From contig MU619339.1 in assembly GCA_025201805.1 (NCBI GenBank), positions 52,245-116,244 on the forward strand: a stretch of 64,000 nt of DNA. Direction: 5' to 3'. Numbering within the stretch: the stretch's first letter is position 1; each line of letters starts with the position of its first letter. Positions 816 through 44,153 of this stretch are shown one piece after another. Source of the stretch: Parasitella parasitica NRRL 2501 (Eukaryota > Fungi > Mucoromycota). The notes beneath the pieces are model-generated. The model searched no databases, had not been told where the DNA came from, and worked only from the letters and a program-made list of their open reading frames with translations. The translations under genes and the position numbers were made by a program.

Positions 816-1432
816 ATGCACCCGAAATTGGTCTGTAGTATCTGCCTGGACGACATGTTTAAAGACGAGGCAATTGTTTCGCTTCCTTGCGGCCATATTT
901 TTGGAGAGTCGTGGTAAACAAAACAGCAAATATACAAACAAACAAATGTTAAAATACGTCATTTAGCATCAAAGAATATATGCGTGCCTCTTCAACACAT
1001 AAATGTCCTCTTTGCCAAACAAGCTATCGTTCTGGAAAACTCCAGCGTATTTATATTTCCCTTGAAGAGAATGCCAATTGCTACAAAGAGCAATGCGATG
1101 AACTTTCCGAGAAGACCGAGACGTTGACTAAACATTGCTTGATGATGGCCCGATTGAGTAAGATGTTGGTGCACAACGCCGCCATAGCAGAGGAAGCAAA
1201 TGCAGTTTTAGATGAGATCGTGAAAGGCGTAAACGAGACTCTGGAAATAGGAGATGAATCTGCTGAAGCAAGTATTGAAGTTACTGAAGTAGTAAGCTCC
1301 CTTGCACGACAAGTGGCAAATCTCTCTACTGAACCTAAAGCCAACAAGCAAGCAACTACGGTTGGTCCAGCAGCAAGCAAAGTAGTGCGCATACCAAGAA
1401 CATTTCGTCAGCTTTTTAAAAAGACCAAATAA
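816..1432 (+). CDS. RING (C3HGC3 variant) + coiled-coil protein, putative E3 ligase; 2 exons (816-913, 967-1432), 187 aa
   Basis: Splicing TG|GTAAAC...TTTAG|C gives MHPKLVCSICLDDMFKDEAIVSLPCGHIFGESCIKEYMRASSTHKCPLCQTSYRSGKLQRIYISL followed by a helical, heptad-like tail. Spliced length 564 nt is in frame. Confidence 0.85.
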
Positions 1433-7212: not shown

Positions 7213-8350
7213 TTCCACAAACCCTGTCCAGCATTCATAATTCTTCTTTGGATTCCAGCCTTTTTATTCAGTGTATATACAGTGTTTAACACTATTGTGA
7301 TTTTTCCTGGAATCCTGATTTTTGCTTCTGCTTCTTGCACTACACCTTTGGCTATTCTAGTACTATTCAATAAAGAGATTTACAGCTCATCATAGTCTCC
7401 GTTTTTCTTTCTGCAATGTACAATTGAGCGCAGAAGACAGATTCGAAATTATCACTGCAGGGCATTCCAGTAATCTGTTTTCTCTTCGGATGTCTGGACT
7501 TTGCTTCGAAGCCCACTGAATGGCTTTAGAAACGAAGTTGAAGGGTTGATGATGATTGAGCCTGCAACATGACATTCTAACTGTCTTTTTTTAAACTTCA
7601 TGTTTGGTGGCAGGCGTACAATAAAGTTAAGAAAGAAAAAAAAAAGAAGAGACTTTAAAATCTTGTCTTCTTTGCTAGTTTTGGATGGGATGTAGTGTTT
7701 GGAACCAGTTTTTACCTGTGTTGATCCAAATTCTCAATTTGTCAATCTATTGTATCCTTTGCCTGCCAAAGCAAACTTGTAGCAGCAATTTCAGAAATTG
7801 CTGGTTTGTTATCAATGTTTAGGTTATGCCTTGTTGCTGTCTTGTTGCTGTCTTAGTCGTTGATTTTGCTGCTGCAACTGAAAAGATATTGCATTTAACA
7901 GGGAATTGCGGGGAGATGTATGCCCAACTTCTTTGTTATGATTGTTGTTGCTTGTATGCATCATGAAAGTAAATTGGCTGTTCAAGTGCTAATTAGTTCG
8001 CAAGACAGACTGATCTGACATTTGTTCTTCTTGATCATCAATAGCAGTAAGGCGTCTTTTGCGACGATAAAAGCGGATTACATAGATGGCATATTATTAA
8101 CAAAATCAAATGCGAAAAATAGAGGTTTGATATGTATTTTTTCAATAGAATAAAACGAAGGTTTAGAGATGATTTCTAACTTCAGGGCTCTGATAATAAA
8201 CGATATTTCCGGATTGAATCGAATTGTACTCAAGACAAGGTAAGGGCAAGTCAGACTTAATTTTATTGTCTCAAATGCAAAAAAAAAAAAAAAAAATATT
8301 CAATATCATCACTCACTTATCTAAGGGTTTTTGATTTTTTTCAAATTTTG
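7213..8350 (-). repeat. Dispersed repeat (degenerate element with coding remnants), copy 1; inverted relative to 43050-44153
   Basis: Reverse complement matches 43050-44153, e.g. the MSC.RL.HHQPFNFVSK..WASKQSPDIRRENRLLEC segment and CTCAAGACAAGGTA / TACCTTGTCTTGAG. Coding remnants continue to about 6800 in this copy. Confidence 0.85.
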
Positions 8351-10937: not shown

Positions 10938-11837
10938 TATGTTCTTCTGTTTCATTGTAGCAAAAGGCTTTTGCCGCGGACACGAAGGTTCCTTGGGTTC
11001 CGTTTCTTTTAAAGAGCTGAGGCCCCTTGGGTCTGTCCGACTGAGGCAGCTTCTTGATAACGTGGAATAATGACTCAAAGTCATCCGTTATCAACGGGCT
11101 TCCTGAAATCCATTGATGGGAAGGAAAGGTACTTTGTTGAAATGGAAATATACAAATAAATACATACAAAGGTACGTACCCTACACTAAAAAAAAAGAAT
11201 AGATGGCTAACACTCAAAAAAAGCGAATGATAAAAGGACATTCTCGAATAATTGCTTATCAACTTGTTTGAACAACTATATTATAACTATGTTCTTCTGT
11301 TTCATTGTAGCAAAAGGCTTTTGCCGCGGACACGAAGGTTCCTTGGGTTCCGTTTCTTTTAAAGAGCTGAGGCCCCTTGGGTCTGTCCGACTGAGGCAGC
11401 TTCTGGATAACGTGGAATAATGACTCAAAGTCATCCGTTATCAACGGGCTTCCTGAAATCCATTGATGGGAAGGAAAGGTACTTTGTTGAAATGGAAATA
11501 TACAAATAAATACATACAAAGGTACGTACCCTACACTAAAAAAAAAGAATAGATGGCTAACACTCAAAAAAAGCGAATGATAAAAGGACATTCTCGAATA
11601 ATTGCTTATCAACTTGTTTGAACAACTATATTATAACTATGTTCTTCTGTTTCATTGTAGCAAAAGGCTTTTGCCGCGGACACGAAGGTTCCTTGGGTTC
11701 CGTTTCTTTTTAAAGAGATGAGGCCCCTTGGGTCTGTCCGACTGAGGCAGCTTCTTGATAACGTGGAATAATGACTCAAAGTCATCCGTTATCAACGGGC
11801 TTCCTGAAATCCATTGATGGGAAGGAAAGGTACTTTG
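10938..11837. repeat. Near-perfect tandem repeat, 350-bp period, about 2.6 copies
   Basis: Units start at 10938, 11288 and 11638 (TATGTTCTTCTGTTTCATTGTAGC). I see only isolated differences (TTCTTGATAA vs TTCTGGATAA; a 1-nt insertion and a substitution in unit 3). Confidence 0.95.
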
Positions 11838-12735: not shown

Positions 12736-13415
12736 AAATGTGACAAATGCGTGAAGTATATGGAATTGTATGGGAGATTGTGAATCTAAAAGAAGCTGGT
12801 ACTGACCTAGCTACAAATCGATTAATAGCATATGTAAAGTTTTTCATTGTCTTTATTATCTTTTGAATTCGCTATTAAGAAGATTCTAGTATAATAACAT
12901 TTCATATTTTGTTCTGACGGTCTCAAGAAATTCTTACAAGGTTTCTTTCGACCTAGAATACGACAATGGCAAAACGAATTCGCACTAGTCAATTGTTTGA
13001 CAAAAGCAAGTGTTAAGGTGAAATGAGCTTAATAAGTTACCATTTACAGTCTTTTTACGGTTTTAAAAAAAAAAAAAAAAAAAGGCCAAATAAATGATAA
13101 AGATCATGGTGATTGTAATAATAAATATTGGGGTTTCTGGTAGCAAACCATTTATTTCTTATAAAAGCTGAGGAAGTGAAAAATCTCCTTAAAAAGATTT
13201 TAAGTGGGGATTTCCATATTTATAGAAAAAAGAGTAATTACTTAGTTCTATCTAAAGTGAAAATAAAAAAGAGAATGTGTTGTAAAATAAGCTATCTTTA
13301 AGTTCAAAATAGTCTTTAAAAAAGTTTACGGTTGCATCTGGGGTTCTATGTGTAAGTATGTCTGTTGACTTGGGATCTAAAACCTTTAAATGGATTCAGC
13401 AACGGACAGCAAGGT

Positions 13416-13800: not shown

Positions 13801-16591
13801 AATGCAAAGTAATGAATTAGACTATATGGCATCTTTTGATTATATAATTGCATAGCTTTGAGCAAGTTTTTGTACTTTTTAAGTTGACATCAGATGATGC
13901 AACGACTTTTTTGACTTTTTTTCGCAAAAGTATTTTTCAAAACCGGAACGTGAGATCTTCAGGCCAGAGACAGACATGAAAGTACTACCATTAAAAAGCC
14001 AAGAAGCACATCATTTGATTAAACTAAATTAAAGTTGTTTTCCTCTTGAATTGGGTAAGCTGTGGCTCCTCAAAGCTAATGCTTTCTTCAAAAAACGCAC
14101 ACTATCTTTCTTTGATAGCGGAGATTAAACGGATCCAAAATCAGGAAGAAAAAGTTCTTTCAGAAACTCCATTTGGCAATTAGAAAACAAAATTACTTCT
14201 TACCTTTCTTCCCGCTATTCCTCACTTTGTGTAGGTCTAATGGTGATTTGAATTTTTCAAAACGACCTCGTCTATCGTAGAAATGGTCAACGACTCTCCT
14301 TTACCTCTGCTCTTATACCCTGACGCAAACCTTTGAATCCTGTATCATCCTAACCATGTAATATCTGATGTAATCTGCTGTGCGGTGTTGGCGTTATGAC
14401 TTTTTTGTTTCCCTGTTTTTGGTGCCTGTCCTGAAGAAGTGGGAGTGGTGCCCCATAGGCCTTTGTGATATGGTCCAGGTGTGGTGACCTGGAACGACTG
14501 ATCCCGCGAACCTCCTACGTCTTTCGAGACAATGGGAACTCTTGTGTCTTTCGAGACATTAAGAGATAGGTTTCTTATCAATCATAAATATATTCAATTG
14601 TTTCATTCCTTCTTCCCCAAACACATTTTACACCTGATATTCTCACCTACGCTCCCCCAACCTCCGATCTCTGTCGTTCTCTCTTCTGTCGTTCTCTCTT
14701 CTACGCTCCCCCTACCTCTGATCTCAGTCTTTCTCTCCTCTTCCTCCTTGGTACGTTTGAAGGACTTTAAAAAAAAAAAAAAAACCCTTATTTCCCTAAA
14801 AAAAAAAAAAAAAAAACAAAATTACTTCTTTGAGGCAAGATATCATCTTCTGATACTATGCATACCACAGCTGTCAGTCTATGATAATAGCTGTATATTT
14901 GGGCAGGCTACACGATGGTGTTATTTTCATAATCCCCGTATGCCTATGGAAAGAATTTTGCTGAAAAACCTCAAAAACAGATTAAGAGGGAAAAGTTGAC
15001 ATTTTGCTTAATTAGAGCGCATTTGCAATCTTTCAGATCAAGGAATGGTCTTTTACGATCCTTTTCTTCTAATATATAATATAGTAAAAAGTTGCATTTT
15101 TGAGGTCAAAATCGAGGATAATGCATAATCAATGATTTTGGATGTGTGGATACAAGGAAAAAATCGAAAAAATCCGTCATTTTGCATCGAAAAAAAAATC
15201 ATGCTCAAATTGCACCAAAATCATATATAATATAGTTTTTTCCCGATGGATGCTATCTTTCGTGTTTTCAGGGCATTTTTGATTATGAAAATCAATTAAA
15301 AAATGGCATTAAAAGCTAAAGTTCTTGTTTTTTAGCTGTAAAAACTATCTATTTGAAGATAATACCACGTCAATGTCAATTCTAGTACATAACAAAGCTC
15401 TATAAATTAAGTATTTTTTATGCCACAAGTATACCCTGCTTCATGGTAATATGATAAAACAGGTGTGGCCCATCGAGTCGGAAGCAGAAGAAGATAATTA
15501 ATGAATCCTGTGCTGCAATAACCCTCTGTTATTTGTGAATAATTCGCAAGTTGCTAATTGCTATTGACAGAGAAGCCCTACTTCCATTGTTGCTTATAAT
15601 AATGCTAAACATGTAAAATAGAAAGTAGGATAGAGGTTAGGATTGAGGTTTAGGGTAATTTTACTAACAAAAGTTCAACTTCGTAATAAGCTTCTGGTAG
15701 ATTCCAGGTTCCAAGCACTGTACTGTGGAGTATCAAGTTCTGAATAGGGGATAACTCGCTATACGAAACACGTTTTTGTTAAAGTTAGTCCCAACTGTGC
15801 ATACTTTCCTTGATATTGTATATGCAGACTTAACTCAACAGATGTAACATAAAATGAAAATGCGAAGTTATATACCGGTAAATAGAGAGTGCCATTTGTT
15901 TCAGAAATAAACTGCCGTTGTGTAAATGCATAATTTGACGGATACGTACAACTAAATGCCTTATTAGTATATGCAGTTTGATAGTTTGATACAGTAGTTT
16001 GATAGTTTAATGGTTTTACTTTTTAGTTCATGTACTTATGCAGTCTGTAAATTTGTCTAAATATTTGAGCCTAATTTCTAACGAATATATCTGATATAAT
16101 CTATCAACATTTAAACATTATGAGATTCAAAAATTTTGTATTGCGGCCCGTTGATGATTGTTCAGTTTCTGAAGTACACGTCGATAGTGTTGATAAAGGA
16201 TTTTTATTGTATTGAAAAATGGGATAATAAAAAACCCAAATAGTCATTCATTTAAAAATACCTAGTGCTCCTGCTGTTTTGTCAAAAATAAAATAATTAC
16301 AGCTTCGCAATTTTGTATATCATCATAAATGTTCTTTTCTTGGGCATTTTTTAATCTATAATAGAACTCTAAAAAATGTCGTTGTATTGAATGCTTCTTC
16401 TCCCTACTTGAAATCTTCCTAGGGAGACATTTCTCTTCTCTCAGAAACTTCTCAGCTTTGATCAGAAATAAAAGGTTTATTGTCAGAAAGCCTAATAATA
16501 TTATCACAAACACCATGACATTTATTATTTATTAAACCATAAAAAGACTGTATATGCAAATGTGTGACATTTTGGCCTGGTAAACGACTGC

Positions 16592-28581: not shown

Positions 28582-30564
28582 ATGTCTAATTTGTATCTAG
28601 AAAAATTGAATCAAAAGGCAGTTCATATCAATGGGGTCACCAGAAAATTCTTTGGTCAACAAGTACCAGATTACATCCACACATTACCCAGTATTAAGAA
28701 GGATGCCATCCGGTGGACATGCAACATTCTGTATTTTGGAGTGGGATTAATGTACAATTGGGCAGTCAGTGCTGTTTTGCGTCAAATGCCAAACATGCAC
28801 GAGTTTCCTTCGAACGTTGCAGGCATGATTGTTCTGTTCTTTTTGCTCATGTGCTCACATACGGCGTTCCCAAAGTTTACTGATAAACTCGTGCTATTTA
28901 TCGATCCGTATTCATCCTTTGCGCTGCGAAGTATGAACATCATGTTTGTCCCGGCCGTTGTGGGAATCGTCAACAATCCACCGACTACTGGAAACGAAGT
29001 GGGTAGAATGATTTGTGTTTTCAGTAAGTTTCGCTGTCTCTGATCTCAATCATATTCCTAATGTTTGATTTCTCTTAAAGTTGTTGCGTACGTAGTTGGA
29101 TTTGTGCTATGTACATTTATAGTGCGTGGTCTAAGGATCATTATCTTTGCCCCTTTTATATCCAAACTCAAAAAACAGAAACTTGATTATGATACATCAA
29201 CAACGCCGAACGTGGGTCGCAAAGAGAAAATTGAAATGCATAAGAATAGAACATTAGACGAAGAAGAAGTCTATGTCAATACACCAACCAATGCTCATTT
29301 GAATAGAGTTTCGTCCGTAACCACCTTTGATACTACAATTCGACCTCTTTCAGATGATGATGCAGCTTCTTGTGTAAGCACTTTGAACCATTATCCATCG
29401 GCTGTCTCTTGCAGAGGAGAGAATAGTGCGCAAACTACAGAGACAACAGCAGCCGATTGCTCCTCGTCCAACAACAACAACGCCTTCTACGAGCCATTCA
29501 ATTCTACAAGACCAAAGAAACATGGGCCTCTGCACTCTTTTGCTATTTGGTGCATGGAACAGTCAACATTTGACGATCTTACGCTATTTATCATTTTCTG
29601 TCTGTGCGCTTTTATTTTTTTGCCTCTTCCAGAAGACAATCTAGCTACGCCCTTTTTCAGATTGTTCCTGTATTTTACCATGACAATACTGCTTTATTCA
29701 GCAGCCTGTCGTTTGCCGCCTCAGATAAGGATAGTCGTCCATCCCATTATCTTGTGCTCGGCTTGCACAATGGCTGGTATCGCGTATTTCGAACGAGTCA
29801 AAGGATTTGACATCAAGCATGGCGTTAACCTCTACAAGACTGGCATCACCTTTATATCTCTTGTTGAAAAAACGAATGTGGGTTGGCCAGGTGGTGGTGA
29901 TATTTTGGGTGCAGCGATGGATGTGGCCATTATCTCTTTGGCCTTCAATGTGTACAAAAGCAGACCAAACTCGCTGCGCGAGGTAAGTTCTCTCGTATGG
30001 TTATCGTCCTAATTTATCACTGTTAACAAGACAAATTAATGCTTGTGTAGTGGATCATCGTCTTTTCCTCGATTGCACCTATGGCATTTTTAATTATGTT
30101 TGTTACCCCTTTGTTTGCTCATGGTATCGGATGTTCGCCAGCTGATAGCCTGGTCTGGGCTTCCAGATCAGTTACCACGGCGATTGGTATCGTAATTGGC
30201 AATGTACTTGGTGCTGATGGAAGTGTGGTAACTTGTATAATTGTGTTTACTGGTATCATGGGGCCCATATGTGGCCCTTACTTGTTTAAACTTGCTCGAG
30301 TTAGAGATGGTATTTATATAAGATTCTTTTTGGATTATATGGCATCCACTAACCGAATTCGTACGTTTTTCAGATGATTATATGACAATTGGCATCACAA
30401 TGGGCTGCAGCTCTCATGGTGTAGGCACGGCATATCTTATCAGTAAAAATCCAAAAGCGAGTGGCATGGCCTCGATTGCTTTTGCCGTCTTTGGTACAAT
30501 CGGCGTTATTGTTGCCTCAATACCTGCTCTCTCGGATACCATTCGACATCTTTCAGGCTATTAA
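28582..30564 (+). CDS. Fused LrgA-LrgB (CidA/CidB; PLGG1-like) membrane transporter, at least 4 exons; start uncertain
   Basis: N-terminal FPSNVAGMIVLFFLL...LRSMNIMFVPAVVGI (LrgA-like). C-terminal SRSVTTAIGI...IVFTGIMG...GITMGCSSHGVGTA (LrgB). Confidence 0.88.
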
Positions 30565-30843
30565 TCCATTTTTTTTTTTACTTTTTGTGTATGATTGAGT
30601 GTATATATTTTTGTAAATTCTTTTCCCTCCACTCTGTCTCTATAGCTCACGCATACCTGTACAAATTCACTCATTCTGCTTGATCAATTCTCAATATTAA
30701 GACTCTGCTATTAGCTATAAACTCGGTGCAAATTTCTAACCCATGCTTTTCTCATATAAACATACTACTGAAATTAATGATACGAGTTGGTTTCTCTTCA
30801 AACGTTAACTTTGTCTGGATAAAATATTTTCGACCTATTTCTC

Positions 30844-30976: not shown

Positions 30977-32297
30977 TTAGATACTCATGTTTTGGATATT
31001 TTGACTCAACTTTTCAACCTGTTCAATATTGGTTGCATGAGAGGTCATCTTTGTCATCAATTCATTATTCTCCATCAAAAGATTTTCCAACTTTTCCTGA
31101 AGCTTTTCACGTGTGAAATTCTGTTTGTATTGTAATAGTATTGCGTTTCTCTTCTTGACTGTTTGCAACCTATTTGACACCGTTTGATGCGCCTGCATTA
31201 TATCTTGGTCTGGAAGTAATGCAACGAGCCGTTCGCGTTTTTCTTGCAATTGTTGATTAGACATCCATAGTATATCTCCTGATTTCTCGAGCTCTTCCAT
31301 CTTTTCATTGAAGACTGATATCTTTTGTTGGGATTCGGGGTTTTCTTCTTCAAACTTGGAAAATTGCACAACCATTTCTGCCACTTGGATCAAAACCTTG
31401 GCTTTTGACAACAGCTTTTCTGTGTCAATTTTTAATGATTTTGCTTCTTCTTGAGATTTTTCAAGTTTTGTGGTTACTGTATTTTCAAGGTTTTTCAAAT
31501 AGTAAAGCCTTTTGAGAATATCTTGATTTTCCTTGTTCCATCTAAACATAATTCTTTCACTACTTTTTTCTTCTTCCTTTGCAGTTTTTCGCTTCTTCTT
31601 TTCATTCAATAGTTCAAGATACTTTTTTTGTAAAATAACATATTGGTTCTTTATGCTATCATATTTTGATTTGAAATCTTCATTGGTGGGTGGCCTTTGA
31701 TTGTTTATAGCTGTATCGATTTGAACTTTGGGTGTTGGAGCACTAGTTATTGCCATGTCATTCACTTTTAACGAAATTAACTCTGACAGGCAACTATCTC
31801 TAGAACGCTCTAAAATATCATATTCCTTTTTAAGCTTTGCCAACGCACTATTTGCTGTCAACATGGTCTTGGTGCATTCTTCAAGCTCCAATAATAGTAT
31901 TTGGTGTTCTTGGTGCGAGGAACTTAACGTGTTTTGGGCATCAGAAAGCTCTCCTTGTAGCAATTCTAATCTTCCATGTGATTCTGTTATGTCTTTTTTC
32001 AATTTGATACATTCTAAAGTATCGCAGTTTTCATTTTGCGAGGGAAAGACTCGAATATACTCTCCTACAAGATTTGAATGGGTTATTGACCTCTTGCCAC
32101 AAAGAGGACAATTGGGATGTCCTCCGCTTTTCCATAAATCAATACTATAGAAAAATAAATAGACGATTAAGACTAAATCTTCTAGTTTCCAACATATAAT
32201 ACCAATTTTTGTCAAATATATGACCACATATAGACATTGCAACCAAAATACTGTCTTCATGCGCAACTTCCAAACATATGTTGCATACTATCTTCAT
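30977..32297 (-). CDS. RING (C3HDC3) + long coiled-coil protein, cluster copy A; exons 32203-32297 and 30977-32144; 420 aa
   Basis: MKIVCNICLEVAHEDSILVAMSICGHIFDKN-C(TG|T)-IDLWKSGGHPNCPLCGK...YIRVFPSQNE; 58-nt GT-AG intron. Confidence 0.88.
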
Positions 32298-33549
32298 TTT
32301 TGGAGTGAAAAAAGAAAATAGCGAATTGAGATTTGTTTGATATGACAAAATGGAATAAAACAGGTTATTATATGAGAGAATTCATTTATCATGGTATCCA
32401 AGTTTCACAGCAATGCATTAAATTACAAACATTAATGTTGTCAAACACCAGAATTTTGTTTTGCCTCTTCCTATTTGTGTATAAATGCATATGTTGTTAT
32501 TTACAACTCTCAACTAGAAGGAATAATAAATGCAATCAAAGAGATATATCAATAGTATTTCATCGAAAAAAAAAAACATTTTGATTTCAATTTAAAATAT
32601 ATATTAGATCAATGCCAAATGATTGCGCATGTATTGAATAACATGCTATAACTCAATAAACAGTTTTCAAAACCCAGGCGTAAATGCATAAATGCATGAT
32701 ATGCCATATACGTATATTTGACAGGATTGTGAGTCGTAAAGATAGCTCTGGAGTCAGCCATCCGCCTGAAAGTATCAAGTTTTTAATTTGATACATCTGA
32801 GCATCGTATAGTGGCTTATAACCAATAATAGACCTTACGTTTAATTGTTCTTCTTTAAACATGTGTATGCATGCACATATACAATGCGAGTGGTCAATTT
32901 TACTTGTTTATTTGAAAATGATTGTTGCTTTAGTCAATTCATATTCACATTACTTCACAGATTATTGTTGGCTATGATGTACCGTTTGAGGATAGTTAAA
33001 GGGACGTGATATTGGCTGGACCCAACGGAAGTACAGAGTGCTCTGTTTCTATGCAATTTCGAACACACATAATCCCCTTGAGGGTATAGATGGACCGTGG
33101 GATGACAGGGAAGATACTTTTACGATGAAACTCGGAGCTACAGTTTAGCTGTTCGCTTGAAAATTACCACAGCCTTTCAAGATGCATTCGTAGACAAGTG
33201 GTATAAAGATCTACACATATTTAGCAGCTCTACAAACAGATCACACAAATAGGTAGATTGATGATACGCTTGTACTATAATAGTTTTCACACAAAATCAG
33301 CACAACGCTTAACTTGTTGGAATCGTCGAAATACTATATAACGTAGGATACTTTCCTGTTTACCTGTTTACCGATGGAGCGTTTTAGAAATTTTCTGTAG
33401 GTTCATGAAGAATAATTGCCGATTACACTCCACCCGTATGAGGAGATAGTGGTAATTTTTGCGGACTCAGCACTTCAAATAGTAATGTACGCCTTATAAC
33501 ATAATCTTTTTTCAGTATCTTTTTTACTGCTTTAACTAGTTTTCTTAAC

Positions 33550-34779
33550 TCAGAGATTTATTGATTGAAAGCTTTGAACTAACTTCTCAGCTTGTTTAAC
33601 GTTGCTTGCATGAGACGCGATCGTTTTTGTTAGATCCTTGTTCTTTCTAAAAATATGGCTCAATTTCTCTGGTATTCTCTTTTGTTTGATATTATGCTTG
33701 TATTCTAACATTTGCGTGTTCTCCCTCTTTGATATTTGCAACTTTCTTTGGGCTGTTTGATACTCCTTCATCGCATCTCCATCTGGCAGTGATACGACAA
33801 GTTTGTCTAGTTCTGCTTGCAATTGTTGGTTTATTGTGCTTAATCCCTTTTCTGACTTCTCAAGCTCATCCATCTTCTTTTTGCAGGCCGATATCGTTCC
33901 TTGGAGGTTGAGCCTTTCTGCTTTTTTCAATTTTGAATGTTGTTGTACGATGTCGACCACTTGGACAGAACTCTTGAACTTTGAAAACAATTTTTCTTTC
34001 TTAATTTGCAATAAGTTCGAGTCGAATTGAGACGACTGAAGTCTTTTTGTTGCTGTATCTGCATAAGTTTTCAAAAGCTCAAAACTTTTGAGAGTATCTT
34101 GATTCAGTTTCTTCCATATCAAAACATCCTTTTTGCTAGTTCTTGTCTTTATTACCGACTTTTGTTGAATTTTACTCTTCTTTTTAACTGAATGTCTTTC
34201 GTTGCCGGATTTATCTGCTTCAATTTCAGTGGGTCTGATGTGTACTTGAGGTGCTGAAACATTAGCCGTAGTCAGACTATTTGATGTTGAAGAATTCAAC
34301 TGTTTTGAGTGATCATGTCTAGAGGGCTCTGAACCTTGATATCTTGACTTTATCGTTTCCAAAGCCTTACTTGCTGTAGACAGGGCTTTACTGCATTCTT
34401 TATGGCTGCGACGTTCGATATTTAATTCATCTCTGACATTTAGAAGCTCCAGTTTTAATGTGTCTATAGTTTTGTTAGCTTCTGCGACTGATTTTTTTAA
34501 CAAAAAACACTCTTGATGCTCAGAGTTGTCAGCAGCGAGATTGGTTGGCCGGTAAGGAGACGGCAATAGATAGGTATTTTGGCATTCAGGACATGTGTAT
34601 TCTAAACCCAAACTATTATCTATACTAAACAACACTTATGAGACCATAGTTCCTCCTCTTTTTTTAACAATAAAGACTCATTACCAGGCTTTATCAAAGA
34701 CATGCCCACATCCTGGCATTAGTATAAAGCATCTCTCCTCACTCGATTTATACACGCAGATGCCGCAAACTGCTATCAT
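33550..34779 (-). CDS. RING (C3HDC3) + coiled-coil protein, cluster copy B; exons 34685-34779 and 33550-34624; 389 aa
   Basis: MIAVCGICVYKSSEERCFILMPGCGHVFDKA-C(TG|T)-IDNSLGLEYTCPECQ; 60-nt intron. Confidence 0.87.
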
Positions 34780-35016
34780 TTGATAACGTTTGAAAAAAAA
34801 AAAAAAAGAGAGATAAGGACTACAAATAGACAATATGTTTTTCTTAAAAAGAATAGGAGAGCATCTAGCAGTCTGTCTTGGACACAAATAAAGAAAAAAA
34901 AGTACCTCCCCCCTCCGAGAGTTGGAAGATACTCCAGTTATTTGAGTATGATTTTTATATATGTCCTCACGTATGGGATTTTTTTATGTAGATATTGTAA
35001 TAAAAAAGCTACCTCT

Positions 35017-36342
35017 TTAATTGATTGAAAACCAAGGCCGCTGAGCAATTTTCAATTCTCTTAACAATTTAGCATTTTCCAAATGCAAAGTATTCTTCGT
35101 AGTTTCCAAATTGTTAGCTTTGCATTTCCAAGTCAACTCGCTAGCCTTTAAACCTCTTATTGAGATTTCGAAAACCTTGACGTTATCTTTCAGTCTGTTA
35201 ATTTCGGTAGTAGTTGATTGCCGCTGAGCATTCAAAGACTCGGTTAAAGTTTTGACTTTCTCTTTCAGATTTTGATTTTCGTTGGCGTATGGCTGCATCT
35301 TTGTTAGATTGTCGTAAGCTATCTTGAGCTTATCCTGCAGATTACGGTTATCGGCCAACCATGTCCTCTCTGCAGCCTGGAGCTTTTGATTATCAAAGTG
35401 TGTCTTATTATGTTTCTCCTGCAAAGCCCGTTTTTCGTTGATTGCAGTCTGTTTTTCCAATTTTATTTTGTTCGTGGTTGTCAACAATTTGTTTTCTCTG
35501 GTCAGTGCATCAGATAATTGCTTATATAAATCCTGCTCATTTGCCAAGATTTCTGCAGTTTGCGATTCTTGCATTTGGAGGGTAAAATCAATCAATTTTT
35601 TCTCTACAAGCTGCTCCCTGGCCAACAAATCACGATACTTTTTCTTCAATTCCAAATGCTCCTTTCGAGATGTTTGATTTGCGTGCTTATCTTCCGGTTT
35701 CGATTTGGTAGCATCTTCCGACAAGTCCTGCGATTTTAATTGCTCTCCTAATGTTTGACACAGGTTTTGAGATTTCTTGAGGTTACTGGCCAACACCTGA
35801 TTAGTCAACTTGAGTTTATCATTTTTTGTAAAGCAATCATCTTTGGCGCGTTTCAGACGGTCATTTTCCGCCTTTTGTTTACTCAATGATTTGGATGTTT
35901 TTTCCAGTGATTCTTTGGTCTTTTGAAATTTTGTCAATACGGCTTCGTGCTCTTGGCGAGAAGAAGTTAAGGCAATTTTGGTGTCTGAAAGATTTTTCTC
36001 TAGAGACTCTGATATTTGATGGGCTTTGGCAAGTTCCTTCTTTAGCTTTATGCATTCTGGAGTATCGCGGTTTTCATTTTGGGAGGGATATATTCGAACA
36101 TAGTCTGGCTTAAGGAATGAGTTGTTTAGGGGACTCTTTTTGCAAATAGGACAATCACGACATCCTCTGCTTCTAAAGTCGTCTATACTACATGGCAAAC
36201 ATAAGGTTGAGATCAAAATCTTCAAAACAAAGTAGTTTTTCAGTTACCACTCTCTATCAAAGATATGACCACATGAAGACATTGCAACTAAAGTGCTGTC
36301 TTCATGCATATCTTCCAAACATATGCTGCATATTATCCTCAT
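35017..36342 (-). CDS. RING (C3HDC3) + coiled-coil protein, cluster copy C; exons 36248-36342 and 35017-36187; 421 aa
   Basis: MRIICSICLEDMHEDSTLVAMSSCGHIFDRE-C(TG|T)-IDDFRSRGCRDCPICKK...YVRIYPSQNE; 60-nt intron. Confidence 0.88.
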
Positions 36343-36619
36343 CTTTTGAGCAAGATAACTTGAAAATAAAAGAACAAGATGGAGAAACGAGGTTCTTCAG
36401 AATATACACAAACAAAAAGCAAAACAAGTTTCCATTTTATACTAGCTTCTTAAATGTCACAAGATCACATCAGAATGATTAACTTACATGATCTCAAATT
36501 GTCAATAATCAGGAACCATTAAAGAGTTTCTTTTACATAAGCTATGTGTGATTTTCTTTGACTTCCTCTGAACGTATTGTCAGCAGCGACCTTAACATGG
36601 AAAGATATCACCACTGCTT

Positions 36620-37936
36620 TTAGTAAAAAAGAATATTTGGTTCCAAAATGAAGTGTTGTACTAGTATTGTACTACGTTTTAGAACAGGTGACCATAGCAT
36701 AAACTTGCATAACTGGAGTGTATCAGATATCATAATACTGGATAAATAAGGTCGTTTGTCCTTAAGTTTCACCAGATTCTGCAGTATTTCTAACTCACGA
36801 ATTCGGATGAGCTTGACTATTTTTCTAGCATTGAGCTGTTTTTTGAGACCATTTACTTCCATGTAAATTCGAAAATTATAATGGACTTCGTTCCTTATAA
36901 CCCTGCTAACGACCTCTTTTACACTACGACGAGAGCTCAGATGCGATAAACTTGATGATATATCCGTCTAGTATGGCGACGTTCAATGCTGATCGATCTG
37001 GATAATATTCCTGAAACACAATCTGTTGCACTGGAAGAAGTAGCAGAAAGTCTTGTTGAAGACTTCAAACAGGTTACCATTATTTAATTTAAAGAATATA
37101 ATAAGTATGGGCAGAACGAGCACTTTAATCGAGCAATTCAGTAAGATGAACTAAAAGTGCTAAAAGTAGCAACAGTATGGTATACCTCGTAGCTCTGCTT
37201 ATTTTCGTAGAACATTTAGCAGCACTTTACTTTATTACCAAGCCTCTCTACAAAATAAGTATCTTAGCACTCTTTAATTTGGGGGATTGCTTGTCAATTT
37301 TTTGGGCTTTAGTATTGATATTTTACAAGATCCTCATAATTAATGCTTCTCGAACTATCTGTTTGTGTCCAACTTGGTTTCAAGTTAATGAAAGGTACTT
37401 TTCAAATAAATAATATTATGGTATGCAGTGCTCTAGCAGTTACATGACTCTGTGGTAGTTCGATATTTATGGTTGAGGAACATGTTATAAGTATAAAGCT
37501 TCTTTTTTTTTAGGTTTGCGCCTTTTTGCAAAAAGCGAGATTTTCTCTAGTATTGCATTGTGTTTGTCTTGGAAAAAACACTTCGTCTTGAATATTTTGT
37601 CCTTACTTTGTCTCAAGCTTAAAATATCTATCAATAGTTTCTTCACTCCTTATTTTGAATCAGTCACTTGCTTTTCCAAATACTGAGGATATACGGTTTA
37701 ATGTTACTGATCTCTTGTTCTCAAGTTGGGCCATTTATTTCAATTGTCAATTCAGCAATGTCCTTTCCCTTGTTGAGCAGATCATTATGCTTATTTTTAA
37801 ATAAAGAATATCTTGCTCGAAAGCTTTGGAATTCTCGCCTTAAACTGCAATTGCTAACTGTAGAACTGTTGATAGTTGTGTTATTTAAAAGCATCGTATA
37901 ACAAAAAGGGCATTTCACTTTTCCTGCAAGATAAGA
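36620..37936 (-). pseudogene. Probable decayed RING/coiled-coil paralog
   Basis: After a TTTAG acceptor-like site: SYLAGKVKCPFCY, then K/E/L-rich frames broken by stops and frameshifts. Same strand as, and located between, copies C and D. No first exon found. Confidence 0.4.
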
Positions 37937-37965
37937 CTAAAGGTTGCGATAGATTTATATGTATC

Positions 37966-38020
37966 GTGTGCGTGTGTGTGTGTGTGCGTGTGCGCGTGTG
38001 TGTGTGTGTGTGTGTGTGTG
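37966..38020. repeat. Imperfect (TG)n microsatellite
   Basis: TG tract with CG interruptions. Confidence 0.9.
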
Positions 38021-38717
38021 TTTTTTTGCTCATTCATCAAGGAATTATTGCTTGTCAAGTACTTATGGAAGATGATTCTAAGAATTCAATTTAGTCTGAA
38101 TCATCGATCTGTAACGCAACCACATTATAATTCGGCTTTACGGGATCTCTTTGTAAATTATGGCGTTTCAGGCTACCATTGCTATATCTGCTAATTGACA
38201 TGTAAATTTAAAACGATTCTCGTTTATACAGACACTTTTCGTCTTTTGTGTCTATTTCCTAGCTACAAAACAAGAAGAACAGCATCATTCATAAAATGTA
38301 TCGATTAGGTTTGTGATTCAATTATGCTTTTTAGTGCTCAAGAGCAACCTTTATAACAGAATTATATCACCAACGCCTCAGGATAGATCAGCATTGGCAG
38401 CGGATAAAGTTATTGGTGTCTACGAATATTTTGTTTACAGATCAGGCTACATATTGATCAGGCAATGAATCAGGAAGTAGATCACGCTATTCAGTGCTGC
38501 ATTTGTAGAGTGTCATTTGGAACAGACAGCCAGCTTTGTAGGGTTGGTGACCTGTCAGCGTATATTTACTCAACAGCCATGGGATACACTCACGGGAATC
38601 ATTAAAAGGATGAAATCTCACTTTATTTATGTATGTATTATGTACGTGTATCGTGATGTAATTTATGTACTTTTCTTTTTAGCAATTAAAGAATATATCG
38701 TTACTGTACAAATTTGA

Positions 38718-39733
38718 TTATTCTTTATCTTTATTTTCTGCATTCACCGCTCTATCAATGGATGATCCTGAGGAATTGGTGGCGAAATTCAAATTCATAA
38801 CCTTTTTCAGAAACTTTTGCTCTTTGGCTTTTGCTGCGTCGAGTTGATCTTCAAGCTGTCGAAAGCGAAGCGACTCGAATTCTGACCTGGAAGGAGGAGG
38901 AGCAGGAGGAGGGGCCGTATCAAATGTAGCAAGTGTCAGCTCAATAAATTTCTTTTCAAGCTTTTCCATGTTGTTTTTTAAGGTTTTGTGTTCTCTGCTC
39001 AGATTCTTGTATTTAGATTCGAGAGTTTTGTCTAGAATTGACCTATGGTGAGTTCCTCTAGAAACGCTTTCCTTGTCCGCATACTTGTATTCATCGACTT
39101 CTTGCTTCAACAGCCTGATTTTGTTGTTGGATATCTCCAAGTTCATGGTCAATAAATCAATAGCTTTCTGCTTGGGGATAAGCTTCAGCGCCATTTTATC
39201 AGCCTCTTCTTTCATTTTAAACTTCATATCTTCAAGCTCCTCGTATAGCCTCTTTGTCTCTACCTCGGTCAAAACTTTTTGTGTAAACATCTTTCTCAGC
39301 TCATATTCTGAGCGTCTTTTCGCATTGTTGGCTCGGTTCAACTCGTCTCTGACAACAGTTAACTTGACCGCTAGATCGTCATACTCTTTCTGAACTCTGT
39401 TGATTTCAGTCTTGATGACATCGGTCTCGGCCAAAGCGTCCATCAGAGCTCTGTTATCAGGGTCGCAAATGTCGTCAGATACAGAGAAATAAACTTTTTT
39501 GAATGGGGGACAACATCTGGTTGTTGGCGCATTACATAAAGGGCACTTTTCGCCAACTAATAAGTACTGCGTGATGCTAAAATTTAAACTGAGTCGCATT
39601 GTTCATGCCAGCAAGAAAATATGAATATCAGGGCTTACCATTCTGCATCAAAGATATGACCACAAACAATCAATGAAACCACCTCGGAATCGACCGTCAT
39701 CTCCTCCAAGCAAATACTGCAAGAAACTTTCAT
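38718..39733 (-). CDS. RING (C3HDC3) + coiled-coil protein, cluster copy D; exons 39639-39733 and 38718-39576; 317 aa
   Basis: MKVSCSICLEEMTVDSEVVSLIVCGHIFDAE-C(TG|C)-ITQYLLVGEKCPLCNA...FKKVYFS; 62-nt intron; Pro-rich patch APPPAPPPS near the C-terminus. Confidence 0.9.
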
Positions 39734-43049: not shown

Positions 43050-44153
43050 GAAAAAAATTGAAAAAATCAAAAAACTTTCAACTTTAGAAGATAAGTGAGT
43101 GAATGAGGCTGATAATTAAGTGAAAAATAATGAATATTGTCAATATATTTTGAGGCAGTAAAATCAAGTCCTGACTTGCCAATACCTTGTCTTGAGTAAA
43201 ATTCGATTCAAACCGGATGTCTCGTTTATTATTAGAGCCCTAAAGTTAGAAATCGTATATAAACCTTCACATTTTCGATTTATTCAATTAAAGAAAATAC
43301 ATATCAACCACTACTGTTCGCATTTAATCTTGTTAGAAACATGTCATCTATTTCATCCGCTTTTAATGGTTGCAAAAGACGCCTTATTGCTATTGATGGT
43401 TCAAATGTCCGATTAGTCAGTCTTGCAGACTAATCAGCACTTGAACGGCTCAGAATGCATACAATCAACAACAATCATAACAAAGAAGCTGAGCATAACT
43501 CTCACCACAATTCCCTGTTCAATGCAATATTCTTTCAGCTGCAACAGTGAAATTAACAACTAGGAACAAGACGGCAACGACAAGCCAGTAGTTTCTGAAA
43601 TCGCAGCTACAGCTTGCTTTGGCAGGCTAAGGATGCGGTAGATTGATAAATTGAAAATTTGGGTCAACACAGGTAAAAACTGGCTCCAACCACCGCATCC
43701 CATCCAAAACTAGCAAAGAAGACAAGATTTAAGGTCTCTTCTTTTCTTTCTTTCTCAACTTTATTGTACGCCTGCCATCAAACATGAAGTTCAAAAAAAA
43801 AGTTAGAATGTCATGTTACAGGCTCAGCCATCATCAACCCTTCAACTTCGTTTCTAAAGCATTCAGTGGGCTTCGAAGCAAAGTCCAGACATCCGAAGAG
43901 AAAACAGATTACTGGAATGCTCTGCAGTCATAATTTCGAATCTGTCTTCTGCGCTCAATTGTACATTGCAGAAAGAAAAATGAAGACTATAATGAGCTGT
44001 ACATCTCTTTATTGAAAAGTACTAGAATACCCAATGGTATAGTGCAAAAAAAGTAAGAGTTCAGGAAAACTCACAATAATGTTAAACACCGTATATACAC
44101 TGAATAAAAAGGCTGCAAGTCCAAAGAAGAATACTAGACAGAATTTGTGGAAG
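43050..44153 (+). repeat. Dispersed repeat copy 2 (inverted relative to 7213-8350)
   Basis: Direct sequence comparison with the reverse complement of 7213-8350. Confidence 0.85.

What the first reader, a model, noticed from the sequence alone, without database searches (positions are those of the whole stretch)
30977..39733. Hidden tandem array of fast-diverging RING + coiled-coil E3-ligase-like genes
Seen: four co-oriented two-exon genes, each with an exactly 95-nt first exon, a 58-62-nt intron and one long exon encoding roughly 270-370 aa of heptad-like sequence. A fifth family member sits at 816-1432. The ORF track shows them only as anonymous coiled-coil ORFs because the RING is split by the intron. 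The RING scaffold is conserved, while the tails differ strongly in length and sequence. Known: an N-terminal RING followed by CPxC, a [KR][IV][YF] strand and a coiled coil is the layout of TRAIP, and more loosely of TRIM and Zip3/RNF212 ligases. Inference: a lineage-specific, birth-and-death family of ubiquitin or SUMO ligases. Such a pattern is typical of genetic conflict (TRIM-like antiviral or anti-endosymbiont defence, allorecognition, or meiotic functions). I know of no description of such a cluster in Mucorales.
Basis: partly seen in the sequence, partly recalled or inferred. Interest (0 to 1): 0.8.

Follow-up and report, generated by a model that had tools for sequence, protein, structure and literature searches.

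The report
TRAIP-derived RING ligase copies in moulds
This pin mould carries a real, spliced cluster of ubiquitin-ligase-like genes that appear to have split off from the DNA-replication guardian TRAIP, swapped one zinc-binding residue, and been repeatedly copied, recombined and lost across its fungal family; their job is untested and there is no sign yet of an arms race.

Summary
Observation confirmed. Four two-exon RING + coiled-coil genes (420, 389, 421, 317 aa; 95-nt exon 1; 58-62-nt introns) plus a 187-aa copy at 816-1432. Three introns are confirmed to the base in a probable RNA run. The genome is Parasitella parasitica; it holds seven copies, one broken. All replace zinc ligand 5 with Asp (Gly in one); another scan note saw this on the same stretch. 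The family is TRAIP-related: sea-urchin TRAIP has the identical first intron, and the genome keeps a separate multi-exon, His-type TRAIP-like gene, although a paper calls TRAIP metazoan-only. It is not Parasitella-specific: Mucor has orthologues of copies B, C, D, F, and Benjaminiella (4) and Cokeromyces (3) have separate arrays beside the same ETFDH gene. Birth-and-death is shown: broken copies in four genomes, and gene A looks like a C-head/B-tail mosaic. But orthologues evolve under purifying selection (dN/dS 0.18-0.45, all below 1; flanking genes 0.01-0.10), so conflict is unproven. TRIM and Zip3 membership fail. Verdict: undescribed variant family of TRAIP-type E3 ligases; function inferred only.

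The parts
32203..32297 (-). Gene A exon 1 (95 nt): first half of the RING, ligand 5 = Asp
   Evidence: splice joint 32144/32203 in run X1
30977..32144 (-). Gene A exon 2: CPxC, strand, coiled coil; protein 420 aa; head C-like, tail B-like (mosaic); low depth (about 3-4) in X1; absent at this place in the second Parasitella genome
34685..34779 (-). Gene B exon 1 (95 nt), ligand 5 = Asp
33550..34624 (-). Gene B exon 2; protein 389 aa; fastest copy (dN/dS 0.45); contig depth 370 in X1; orthologue next to LrgAB in Mucor velutinosus
36248..36342 (-). Gene C exon 1 (95 nt), ligand 5 = Asp
35017..36187 (-). Gene C exon 2; protein 421 aa; dN/dS 0.18; contig depth 165 in X1
39639..39733 (-). Gene D exon 1 (95 nt), ligand 5 = Asp
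   Evidence: equals NCBI protein P0001
38718..39576 (-). Gene D exon 2; protein 317 aa; single-copy orthologue directly after ETFDH in three Mucor genomes; dN/dS 0.23
816..913 (+). Gene E exon 1 (98 nt), ligand 5 = Gly
967..1432 (+). Gene E exon 2; protein 187 aa, equals NCBI protein P0004
39987..41981 (-). ETFDH (ETF-QO) gene, upstream anchor; conserved neighbour of the family in Mucor, Benjaminiella and Cokeromyces
28582..30565 (+). LrgA/LrgB-family gene, downstream anchor; neighbour of the B lineage also in Mucor velutinosus (limits approximate)

Best explanation
A Mucoraceae-specific paralogue family derived from the TRAIP-type E3 ligase gene. An early duplicate kept only the first intron and changed RING ligand 5 from His to Asp. 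It then multiplied beside ETFDH, separately in the Cokeromyces/Benjaminiella and Mucor/Parasitella lines, and now turns over by duplication, recombination (gene A = C head + B tail) and pseudogenisation, while core copies B, C, D stay under purifying selection. Most likely mechanism: each protein dimerises through its long coiled coil, as TRAIP does; the RING still folds around two zinc ions with Asp as a ligand and recruits an E2~ubiquitin; and the divergent tail picks the partner or substrate. The most likely setting is TRAIP's own, nuclear genome maintenance, specialised among copies. Shown: gene structure, splicing, kinship, turnover, constraint, RING fold in a model. Inferred: zinc binding by Asp, dimerisation, ligase activity, substrate choice by the tail, cellular role.
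For: Identical phase-2 intron in the ligand-6 Cys codon in all 7 copies, in the genome's His-type multi-exon gene T (95-nt exon 1), in Halteromyces and in sea-urchin TRAIP (95-nt exon 1); the other CGH-type RING domains read in the genome are uninterrupted there. Atlas top hits for D exon 2 are TRAIP clusters, 0.91-0.93 with about 190 shared features. An animal-TRAIP profile ranks T (71 bits) then G, D, E, F (55-62) above all 19 other RINGs tested (43 or less). The Asp/Gly copies form one side of a branch (69/91, 93/91). Asp-type relatives that could be named came only from Mucor, Parasitella, Benjaminiella and Cokeromyces. RING dN/dS 0.11-0.14. AlphaFold model of D 1-150: pLDDT 93.7, RING then one 79-residue helix, superposing on active RING E3s at about 1 A over 47-49 residues. 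Broken copies in four genomes. TRAIP dimerises by its coiled coil (10.1101/2024.11.30.626186).
Against: No activity or localisation data. The E2-contacting Trp is kept only in A and the basic linchpin is lost in A, B, D, E. No PIP box and almost no S/TP sites, and the tails do not align with gene T beyond the strand (hhalign probability 3-22%), so TRAIP's replisome role need not be inherited. The tree does not resolve the branching among T, the Asp clade and animal TRAIP. The animal TRAIP set was drawn from hits to the family profile, so the profile ranking is partly circular. Atlas recognition score was below its threshold (1975 vs 2300).
Confidence: 0.45

Rival explanations
1. Conflict or defence ligases: same origin, but the copies recognise foreign or selfish proteins (mycovirus, transposon, endobacterium, or the partner cytoplasm during hyphal or parasitic fusion) and diversify under that pressure, like TRIMs.
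For: Separate arrays at the same locus in two lineages; mosaic gene A; truncation of the C copy in two Mucor lusitanicus assemblies while a related sequence reads through; B tail reaches dN/dS about 0.73 in residues 121-240; Parasitella fuses with host hyphae (PMC4241652); B and C have high contig depth.
Against: No gene or window exceeds dN/dS 1; CIs B 0.33-0.60, C 0.13-0.25, D 0.15-0.33. Non-parasitic genera have the family and arrays too, so parasitism does not explain it. No B-box, SPRY or other recognition domain. Coiled coils tolerate change, which alone raises dN/dS.
Confidence: 0.25
2. Catalytically weak partner or decoy RINGs: the copies heterodimerise with gene T or each other through the coiled coil and tune or block ligase activity, as BARD1 or BMI1 do for their active partners (established knowledge, from memory).
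For: Fixed His-to-Asp change at ligand 5; loss of the helix Trp in 6 of 7 copies and of the basic linchpin in 4 of 7, while T keeps both; RING scaffold still constrained.
Against: First-loop Ile and the Pro before ligand 7 are kept in all copies; RNF4 is active with Ser at the Trp position (sequence seen, activity from memory); tails are not detectably homologous to T's, which makes pairing with T less likely.
Confidence: 0.2
3. Meiotic or sexual-cycle ligases working like Zip3/RNF212/HEI10 (RING + coiled coil, fast evolving, SUMO or ubiquitin).
For: Same broad layout; fast divergence and paralogue turnover are typical of reproductive genes (from memory); the Mucor lusitanicus C copy lies two genes from an NDT80-family gene, possibly chance.
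Against: Ligand 5 is not Cys; the zf-RING_5 model scores far below zf-RING_2 (27 vs 45 bits for D); no Zip3/HEI10 cluster in either atlas search; B and C are abundant in a run not known to be from mating.
Confidence: 0.08
4. Neutral, decaying duplicates or a prediction artefact.
For: Several copies are broken; A has low depth.
Against: Exact splice joints; intact 389-421-aa frames and dN/dS well below 1 across synonymous distances of 0.7-1.1; orthologue lineages shared with Mucor.
Confidence: 0.02

Closest known systems
TRAIP / RNF206 (Drosophila NOPO, C. elegans TRUL-1)
   Same: RING at the very N-terminus, CPxC, a [KR][IV][YF] strand, then a long coiled coil; identical first intron (95-nt exon 1 in sea-urchin TRAIP); best atlas and profile matches.
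   Different: Ligand 5 Asp/Gly instead of His; helix Trp mostly lost; one intron instead of about nine; no PIP box or disordered CDK-site tail; multi-copy with turnover; the genome keeps a separate His-type gene T that is the better TRAIP candidate.
Plant RING-D and RING-G classes (Asp or Gly at metal ligand 5; PMC3166285, PMC6118397)
   Same: Same substitution at the same ligand, likewise derived from RING-H2 and lineage-restricted.
   Different: RING-D was reported only in Brassicaceae; this is an independent origin in fungi on a TRAIP-type scaffold. No homology beyond the generic RING was tested.
TRIM/RBCC ligases
   Same: N-terminal RING and coiled coil; tandem arrays with birth, death and mosaic genes.
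   Different: No B-box, no PRY/SPRY; RING is H2-derived; no positive selection shown.
Zip3/RNF212/HEI10
   Same: Short N-terminal RING plus coiled coil, fast evolving.
   Different: Those are C3HC4 RINGs (from memory); here ligand 5 is Asp/Gly and no search pointed to them.

Membership tests
TRAIP | N-terminal RING followed by strand and coiled coil | tested here: met
TRAIP | RING-H2 ligand set (His at ligands 4 and 5) | tested here: not met
   Asp in A-D, F, G; Gly in E; His in gene T and animal TRAIPs
TRAIP | Shared gene structure: phase-2 intron in the ligand-6 Cys codon | tested here: met
   Diadema TRAIP, Halteromyces, gene T and all copies; downstream introns are absent in the copies
TRAIP | Nearest named family by sequence features and profile | tested here: met
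   partly circular, and weaker for B
TRAIP | One-to-one orthology | tested here: not met
   A separate single His-type gene T exists in Parasitella and Cokeromyces; the copies are paralogues; branching order unresolved
TRAIP | C-terminal PIP box and CDK-site tail (vertebrate features; PMC4700480) | tested here: not met
   no motif match; 0-2 S/TP sites in the copies; the strict pattern also missed sea-urchin TRAIP
TRAIP | Dimer that travels with the replisome and ubiquitylates CMG or fork barriers | not testable with these tools
   needs biochemistry
RING-D / RING-G ligand class | Asp (or Gly) at metal ligand 5 | tested here: met
   class definition in PMC3166285
TRIM/RBCC | B-box between RING and coiled coil | tested here: not met
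   no Pfam hit and no spare Cys/His cluster; helix begins at residue 71
Zip3/RNF212/HEI10 | C3HC4 RING matching zf-RING_5 best | tested here: not met
   ligand 5 not Cys; zf-RING_5 27.4 vs zf-RING_2 45.2 bits for D; no such atlas cluster
Active RING E3 | Intact E2 surface (loop Ile, helix Trp, Pro, basic linchpin) | tested here: inconclusive
   Ile and Pro kept; Trp only in A; linchpin Lys/Arg in C, F, G only
Conflict-driven gene family | Positive selection (dN/dS above 1 at sites or regions) | tested here: not met
   pairwise only, two Parasitella genomes: 0.18-0.45, highest window 0.74; site models not possible

The most novel reading that the evidence does not exclude
A genome-maintenance ligase (TRAIP) was repurposed in Mucoraceae into a TRIM-like, recombining arsenal of Asp-liganded RING ligases whose coiled-coil tails recognise non-self proteins in a shared, fusing cytoplasm (viruses, transposons, or host and parasite nuclei), giving these NLR-poor-looking moulds an undescribed innate-immune or allorecognition system.
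Probability: 0.2. Interest if true: 0.85.

Novelty: new variant of a known kind. Interest (0 to 1): 0.55.

Why it matters
Two things stand even without a function. First, TRAIP has been called metazoan-specific (PMC7926238), yet Mucorales carry a His-type, multi-exon gene with TRAIP's layout and first intron; Mucor lusitanicus is genetically tractable, so whether an early-diverging fungus uses TRAIP at forks is directly testable. Second, an Asp-at-ligand-5 RING, reported only from Brassicaceae, is fixed across a whole fungal clade under purifying selection, offering a natural test of whether such RINGs bind zinc and E2. If the copies turn out to recognise non-self, this would be a new fungal defence family; the present data do not show that.

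Tried and rejected
A first motif scan demanding Cys/His at ligand 5 found nothing, which exposed the Asp. Word search with gene A exon 2 found no relatives; an alignment of exon-2 pieces did. Pfam on exon 2 gave only weak coiled-coil noise. PDB sequence and fold searches gave generic RINGs only; no TRAIP structure appeared. Rejected: Parasitella-specific or parasitism-driven origin (Mucor, Benjaminiella, Cokeromyces have it); a purely tandem origin of D-C-B-A (D and B anchors are separated in Mucor); one clade for all ETFDH-adjacent copies (AU p 0.015); the annotated 767-aa B+A fusion (B's contig ends at its stop and A has its own spliced exon 1); TRIM and Zip3 membership. Profile-profile alignment did not link the tails to gene T or firmly link T's tail to animal TRAIP. 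Paper searches for Mucor with TRAIP, for Mucorales RING expansions and for the Mucor gene ids found nothing relevant. The zf-RING_5 genome search could not be cut into loci, so the genome's own Zip3/HEI10 genes were not identified. The big protein search was used once because the lineage claim rests on absence of relatives.
Full report
Observation. A two-strand scan for two-exon RING genes recovers five loci in the window: A (32297-30977, 420 aa), B (34779-33550, 389 aa), C (36342-35017, 421 aa) and D (39733-38718, 317 aa) on the minus strand, each with a 95-nt first exon and introns of 58, 60, 60 and 62 nt, and E (816-1432, 187 aa, 98-nt exon, 53-nt intron). Each intron is phase 2 within the codon of the sixth zinc ligand. 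Exon 1 hits Pfam RING models and exon 2 does not. Contigs of the one available run, RNA by the tool's guess, skip exactly the predicted introns of A, B and C and mostly cover exons; depths were 370 (B), 165 (C) and about 4 (A), which cannot rank expression reliably. D and E equal deposited proteins. A first scan that required Cys or His at ligand 5 found nothing: ligand 5 is Asp in A-D and Gly in E. RING identity among copies is 30-62%.

Organism and copy number. The deposited proteins carry BD408DRAFT tags of Parasitella parasitica on a contig of 116,244 bases, the length of the window's contig. Genome searches add G (C43, 143 aa) and F (C13), which has two in-frame stops where the Mucor circinelloides orthologue is intact at 443 aa. 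The motif-plus-donor pattern gives these seven, one more real gene and two non-coding matches, against zero for the control. The annotation fuses B 1-378 to A exon 2; the RNA contigs contradict this.

Kinship. The atlas lists TRAIP clusters first for D exon 2 (0.91-0.93), less clearly for B. The big search with the N-terminal profile returned family members first, then many N-terminal RING-H2 coiled-coil proteins, four of which are named TRAIP-like. Sea-urchin TRAIP has a first exon of exactly 95 nt and the same phase-2 intron, as does a 10-exon His-type gene of Halteromyces. The Parasitella genome holds such a gene too, T (C3:314042 downward, at least 7 exons, 95-nt exon 1, His at ligand 5, Trp kept), which matches Cokeromyces and Gilbertella proteins at 1e-55 and sea-urchin TRAIP at 1e-15 over 270 residues. 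T's second intron may match TRAIP's fourth, but that alignment is ambiguous, and profile-profile support beyond the strand is weak. An animal-TRAIP profile ranks T first and G, D, E, F next, above 19 other RINGs of the genome (partly circular). In trees the Asp/Gly copies form one group (69/91; 93/91); its position relative to T and animal TRAIP is unresolved. I conclude that the copies are TRAIP-related paralogues and T is the likelier orthologue. A paper states that TRAIP is not found outside metazoa (PMC7926238); from memory, automatic annotation already names plant proteins TRAIP, so the claim is probably outdated rather than overturned here.

Range and synteny. Three Mucor genomes have one D orthologue right after ETFDH. 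C-, B- and F-type copies lie elsewhere in Mucor; M. velutinosus B sits before LrgAB, with Sec39, DMAP1 and G6PD genes upstream, and Sec39 and DMAP1 follow D in M. circinelloides. So D and B mark old positions roughly 25 kb apart, and the Parasitella cluster is partly a product of rearrangement. Benjaminiella has four and Cokeromyces three single-intron Asp-type copies directly after ETFDH; these form their own clade (98/86), and one clade of all ETFDH-adjacent copies is rejected (AU p 0.015). The Absidia, Halteromyces and Cunninghamella hits were His-type only, within the limit of the best 150 hits. The second Parasitella genome has D, C, B in the same order, no A between B and LrgAB, 9.6 kb of gaps between D and C, and a frameshifted B-like copy elsewhere.

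Turnover and selection. Broken copies: F here, the B-like copy in the second Parasitella, B in M. velutinosus (frameshifts), C in two M. lusitanicus assemblies (stops at 308 and 341, while a related sequence reads through). Gene A is 45-47% identical to C but 28-29% to B over residues 1-170, and 38-40% to B with no significant match to C over 200-420. The tail cannot group with C (AU p 3e-8); the head groups with C (93/91), though grouping with B is not formally rejected (p 0.067). A mosaic is the simplest reading. Between the two Parasitella genomes dN/dS is 0.23 (D), 0.18 (C) and 0.45 (B), with RING values 0.11-0.14, against 0.01-0.10 for five flanking exons; bootstrap intervals stay below 0.61 and no 60-codon window passes 0.74. 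The genes are fast but constrained. Pairwise tests at dS near 1 cannot see site-level selection.

Mechanism. The model of D 1-150 (pLDDT 93.7) is a RING, a short strand and one long helix and superposes on active RING E3s at about 1 A; the alignment included TRAIPs, so the fold is not independent of them. TRAIP dimerises through its coiled coil and needs its RING (PMC4700480). I infer dimeric ubiquitin ligases with Asp as a zinc ligand and the tail as specificity module, most likely acting in the nucleus (0.45). The E2 surface is partly degenerate, so partner or decoy RINGs are a real rival (0.2). Conflict or defence fits the arrays, mosaic and losses, and Parasitella's fusion lifestyle (PMC4241652), but lacks positive selection and is not tied to parasitism (0.25). 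A meiotic role is least supported (0.08).

Known classes. Asp at ligand 5 defines RING-D (PMC3166285), reported only in Brassicaceae (PMC6118397); this is an independent fungal case. TRIM (no B-box) and Zip3/RNF212 (ligand set, Pfam ranking) fail. Strict TRAIP membership fails on ligand 5 and orthology, while 'works like TRAIP' is open. No paper on this family was found.

Limits and handling.

Verdict. Real, expressed, undescribed variant family of TRAIP-type RING ligases in Mucoraceae with documented birth and death; function and conflict unproven. Interest 0.55.

Noticed in passing
G000:C3:314042-312600 (L068, L085), minus strand: Single multi-exon His-type RING-H2 gene (T, about 323 aa; last exon uncertain) with TRAIP's layout and first intron: candidate fungal TRAIP orthologue, with relatives in Cokeromyces, Gilbertella, Halteromyces, Absidia.
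   Followed up: partly
window vs GCA_000938895.1 (L052, L055): The two genomes named Parasitella parasitica are only about 80% identical in DNA (dS 0.6-1.4), so they look like different species.
   Followed up: partly
window 30977-34779: The deposited 767-aa model BD408DRAFT_446541 fuses genes B and A; RNA contigs show two separate genes.
   Followed up: yes
window 7213-8275 and 43149-44152: About 1.05-kb inverted dispersed repeat, 82% identical, no long ORF; probably a decayed transposon.
   Followed up: no
window 10938-11837: 350-bp tandem unit, 2.6 copies, 99% identical: very recent duplication or assembly artefact.
   Followed up: no
window 13089-13210 and 16401-16533: Short inverted pair, 73% identical over about 130 bp.
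   Followed up: no
window 32927-33276: A low-depth contig of run X1 lies in the spacer between genes B and A; unexplained (antisense, non-coding or DNA carry-over).
   Followed up: no
L011 5869-9485 (G000:C13, next to pseudogene F): Three small related ORFs (102-144 aa) with signal-peptide-like starts in tandem: a small secreted-protein cluster.
   Followed up: no
L058 3878-10977 (Mucor lusitanicus): The C-type copy lies two genes from an NDT80/PhoG-family transcription factor and is truncated by two stops in both assemblies.
   Followed up: partly
L060 5984-6892 (Benjaminiella): First array copy also lost zinc ligand 2 (Phe for Cys), and is annotated with its intron read through.
   Followed up: no
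G000 genome, RING loci L023, L027, L028, L033, L035: At least five paralogues of a Dma1/Chf-like RING-H2 gene (identification from memory).
   Followed up: no
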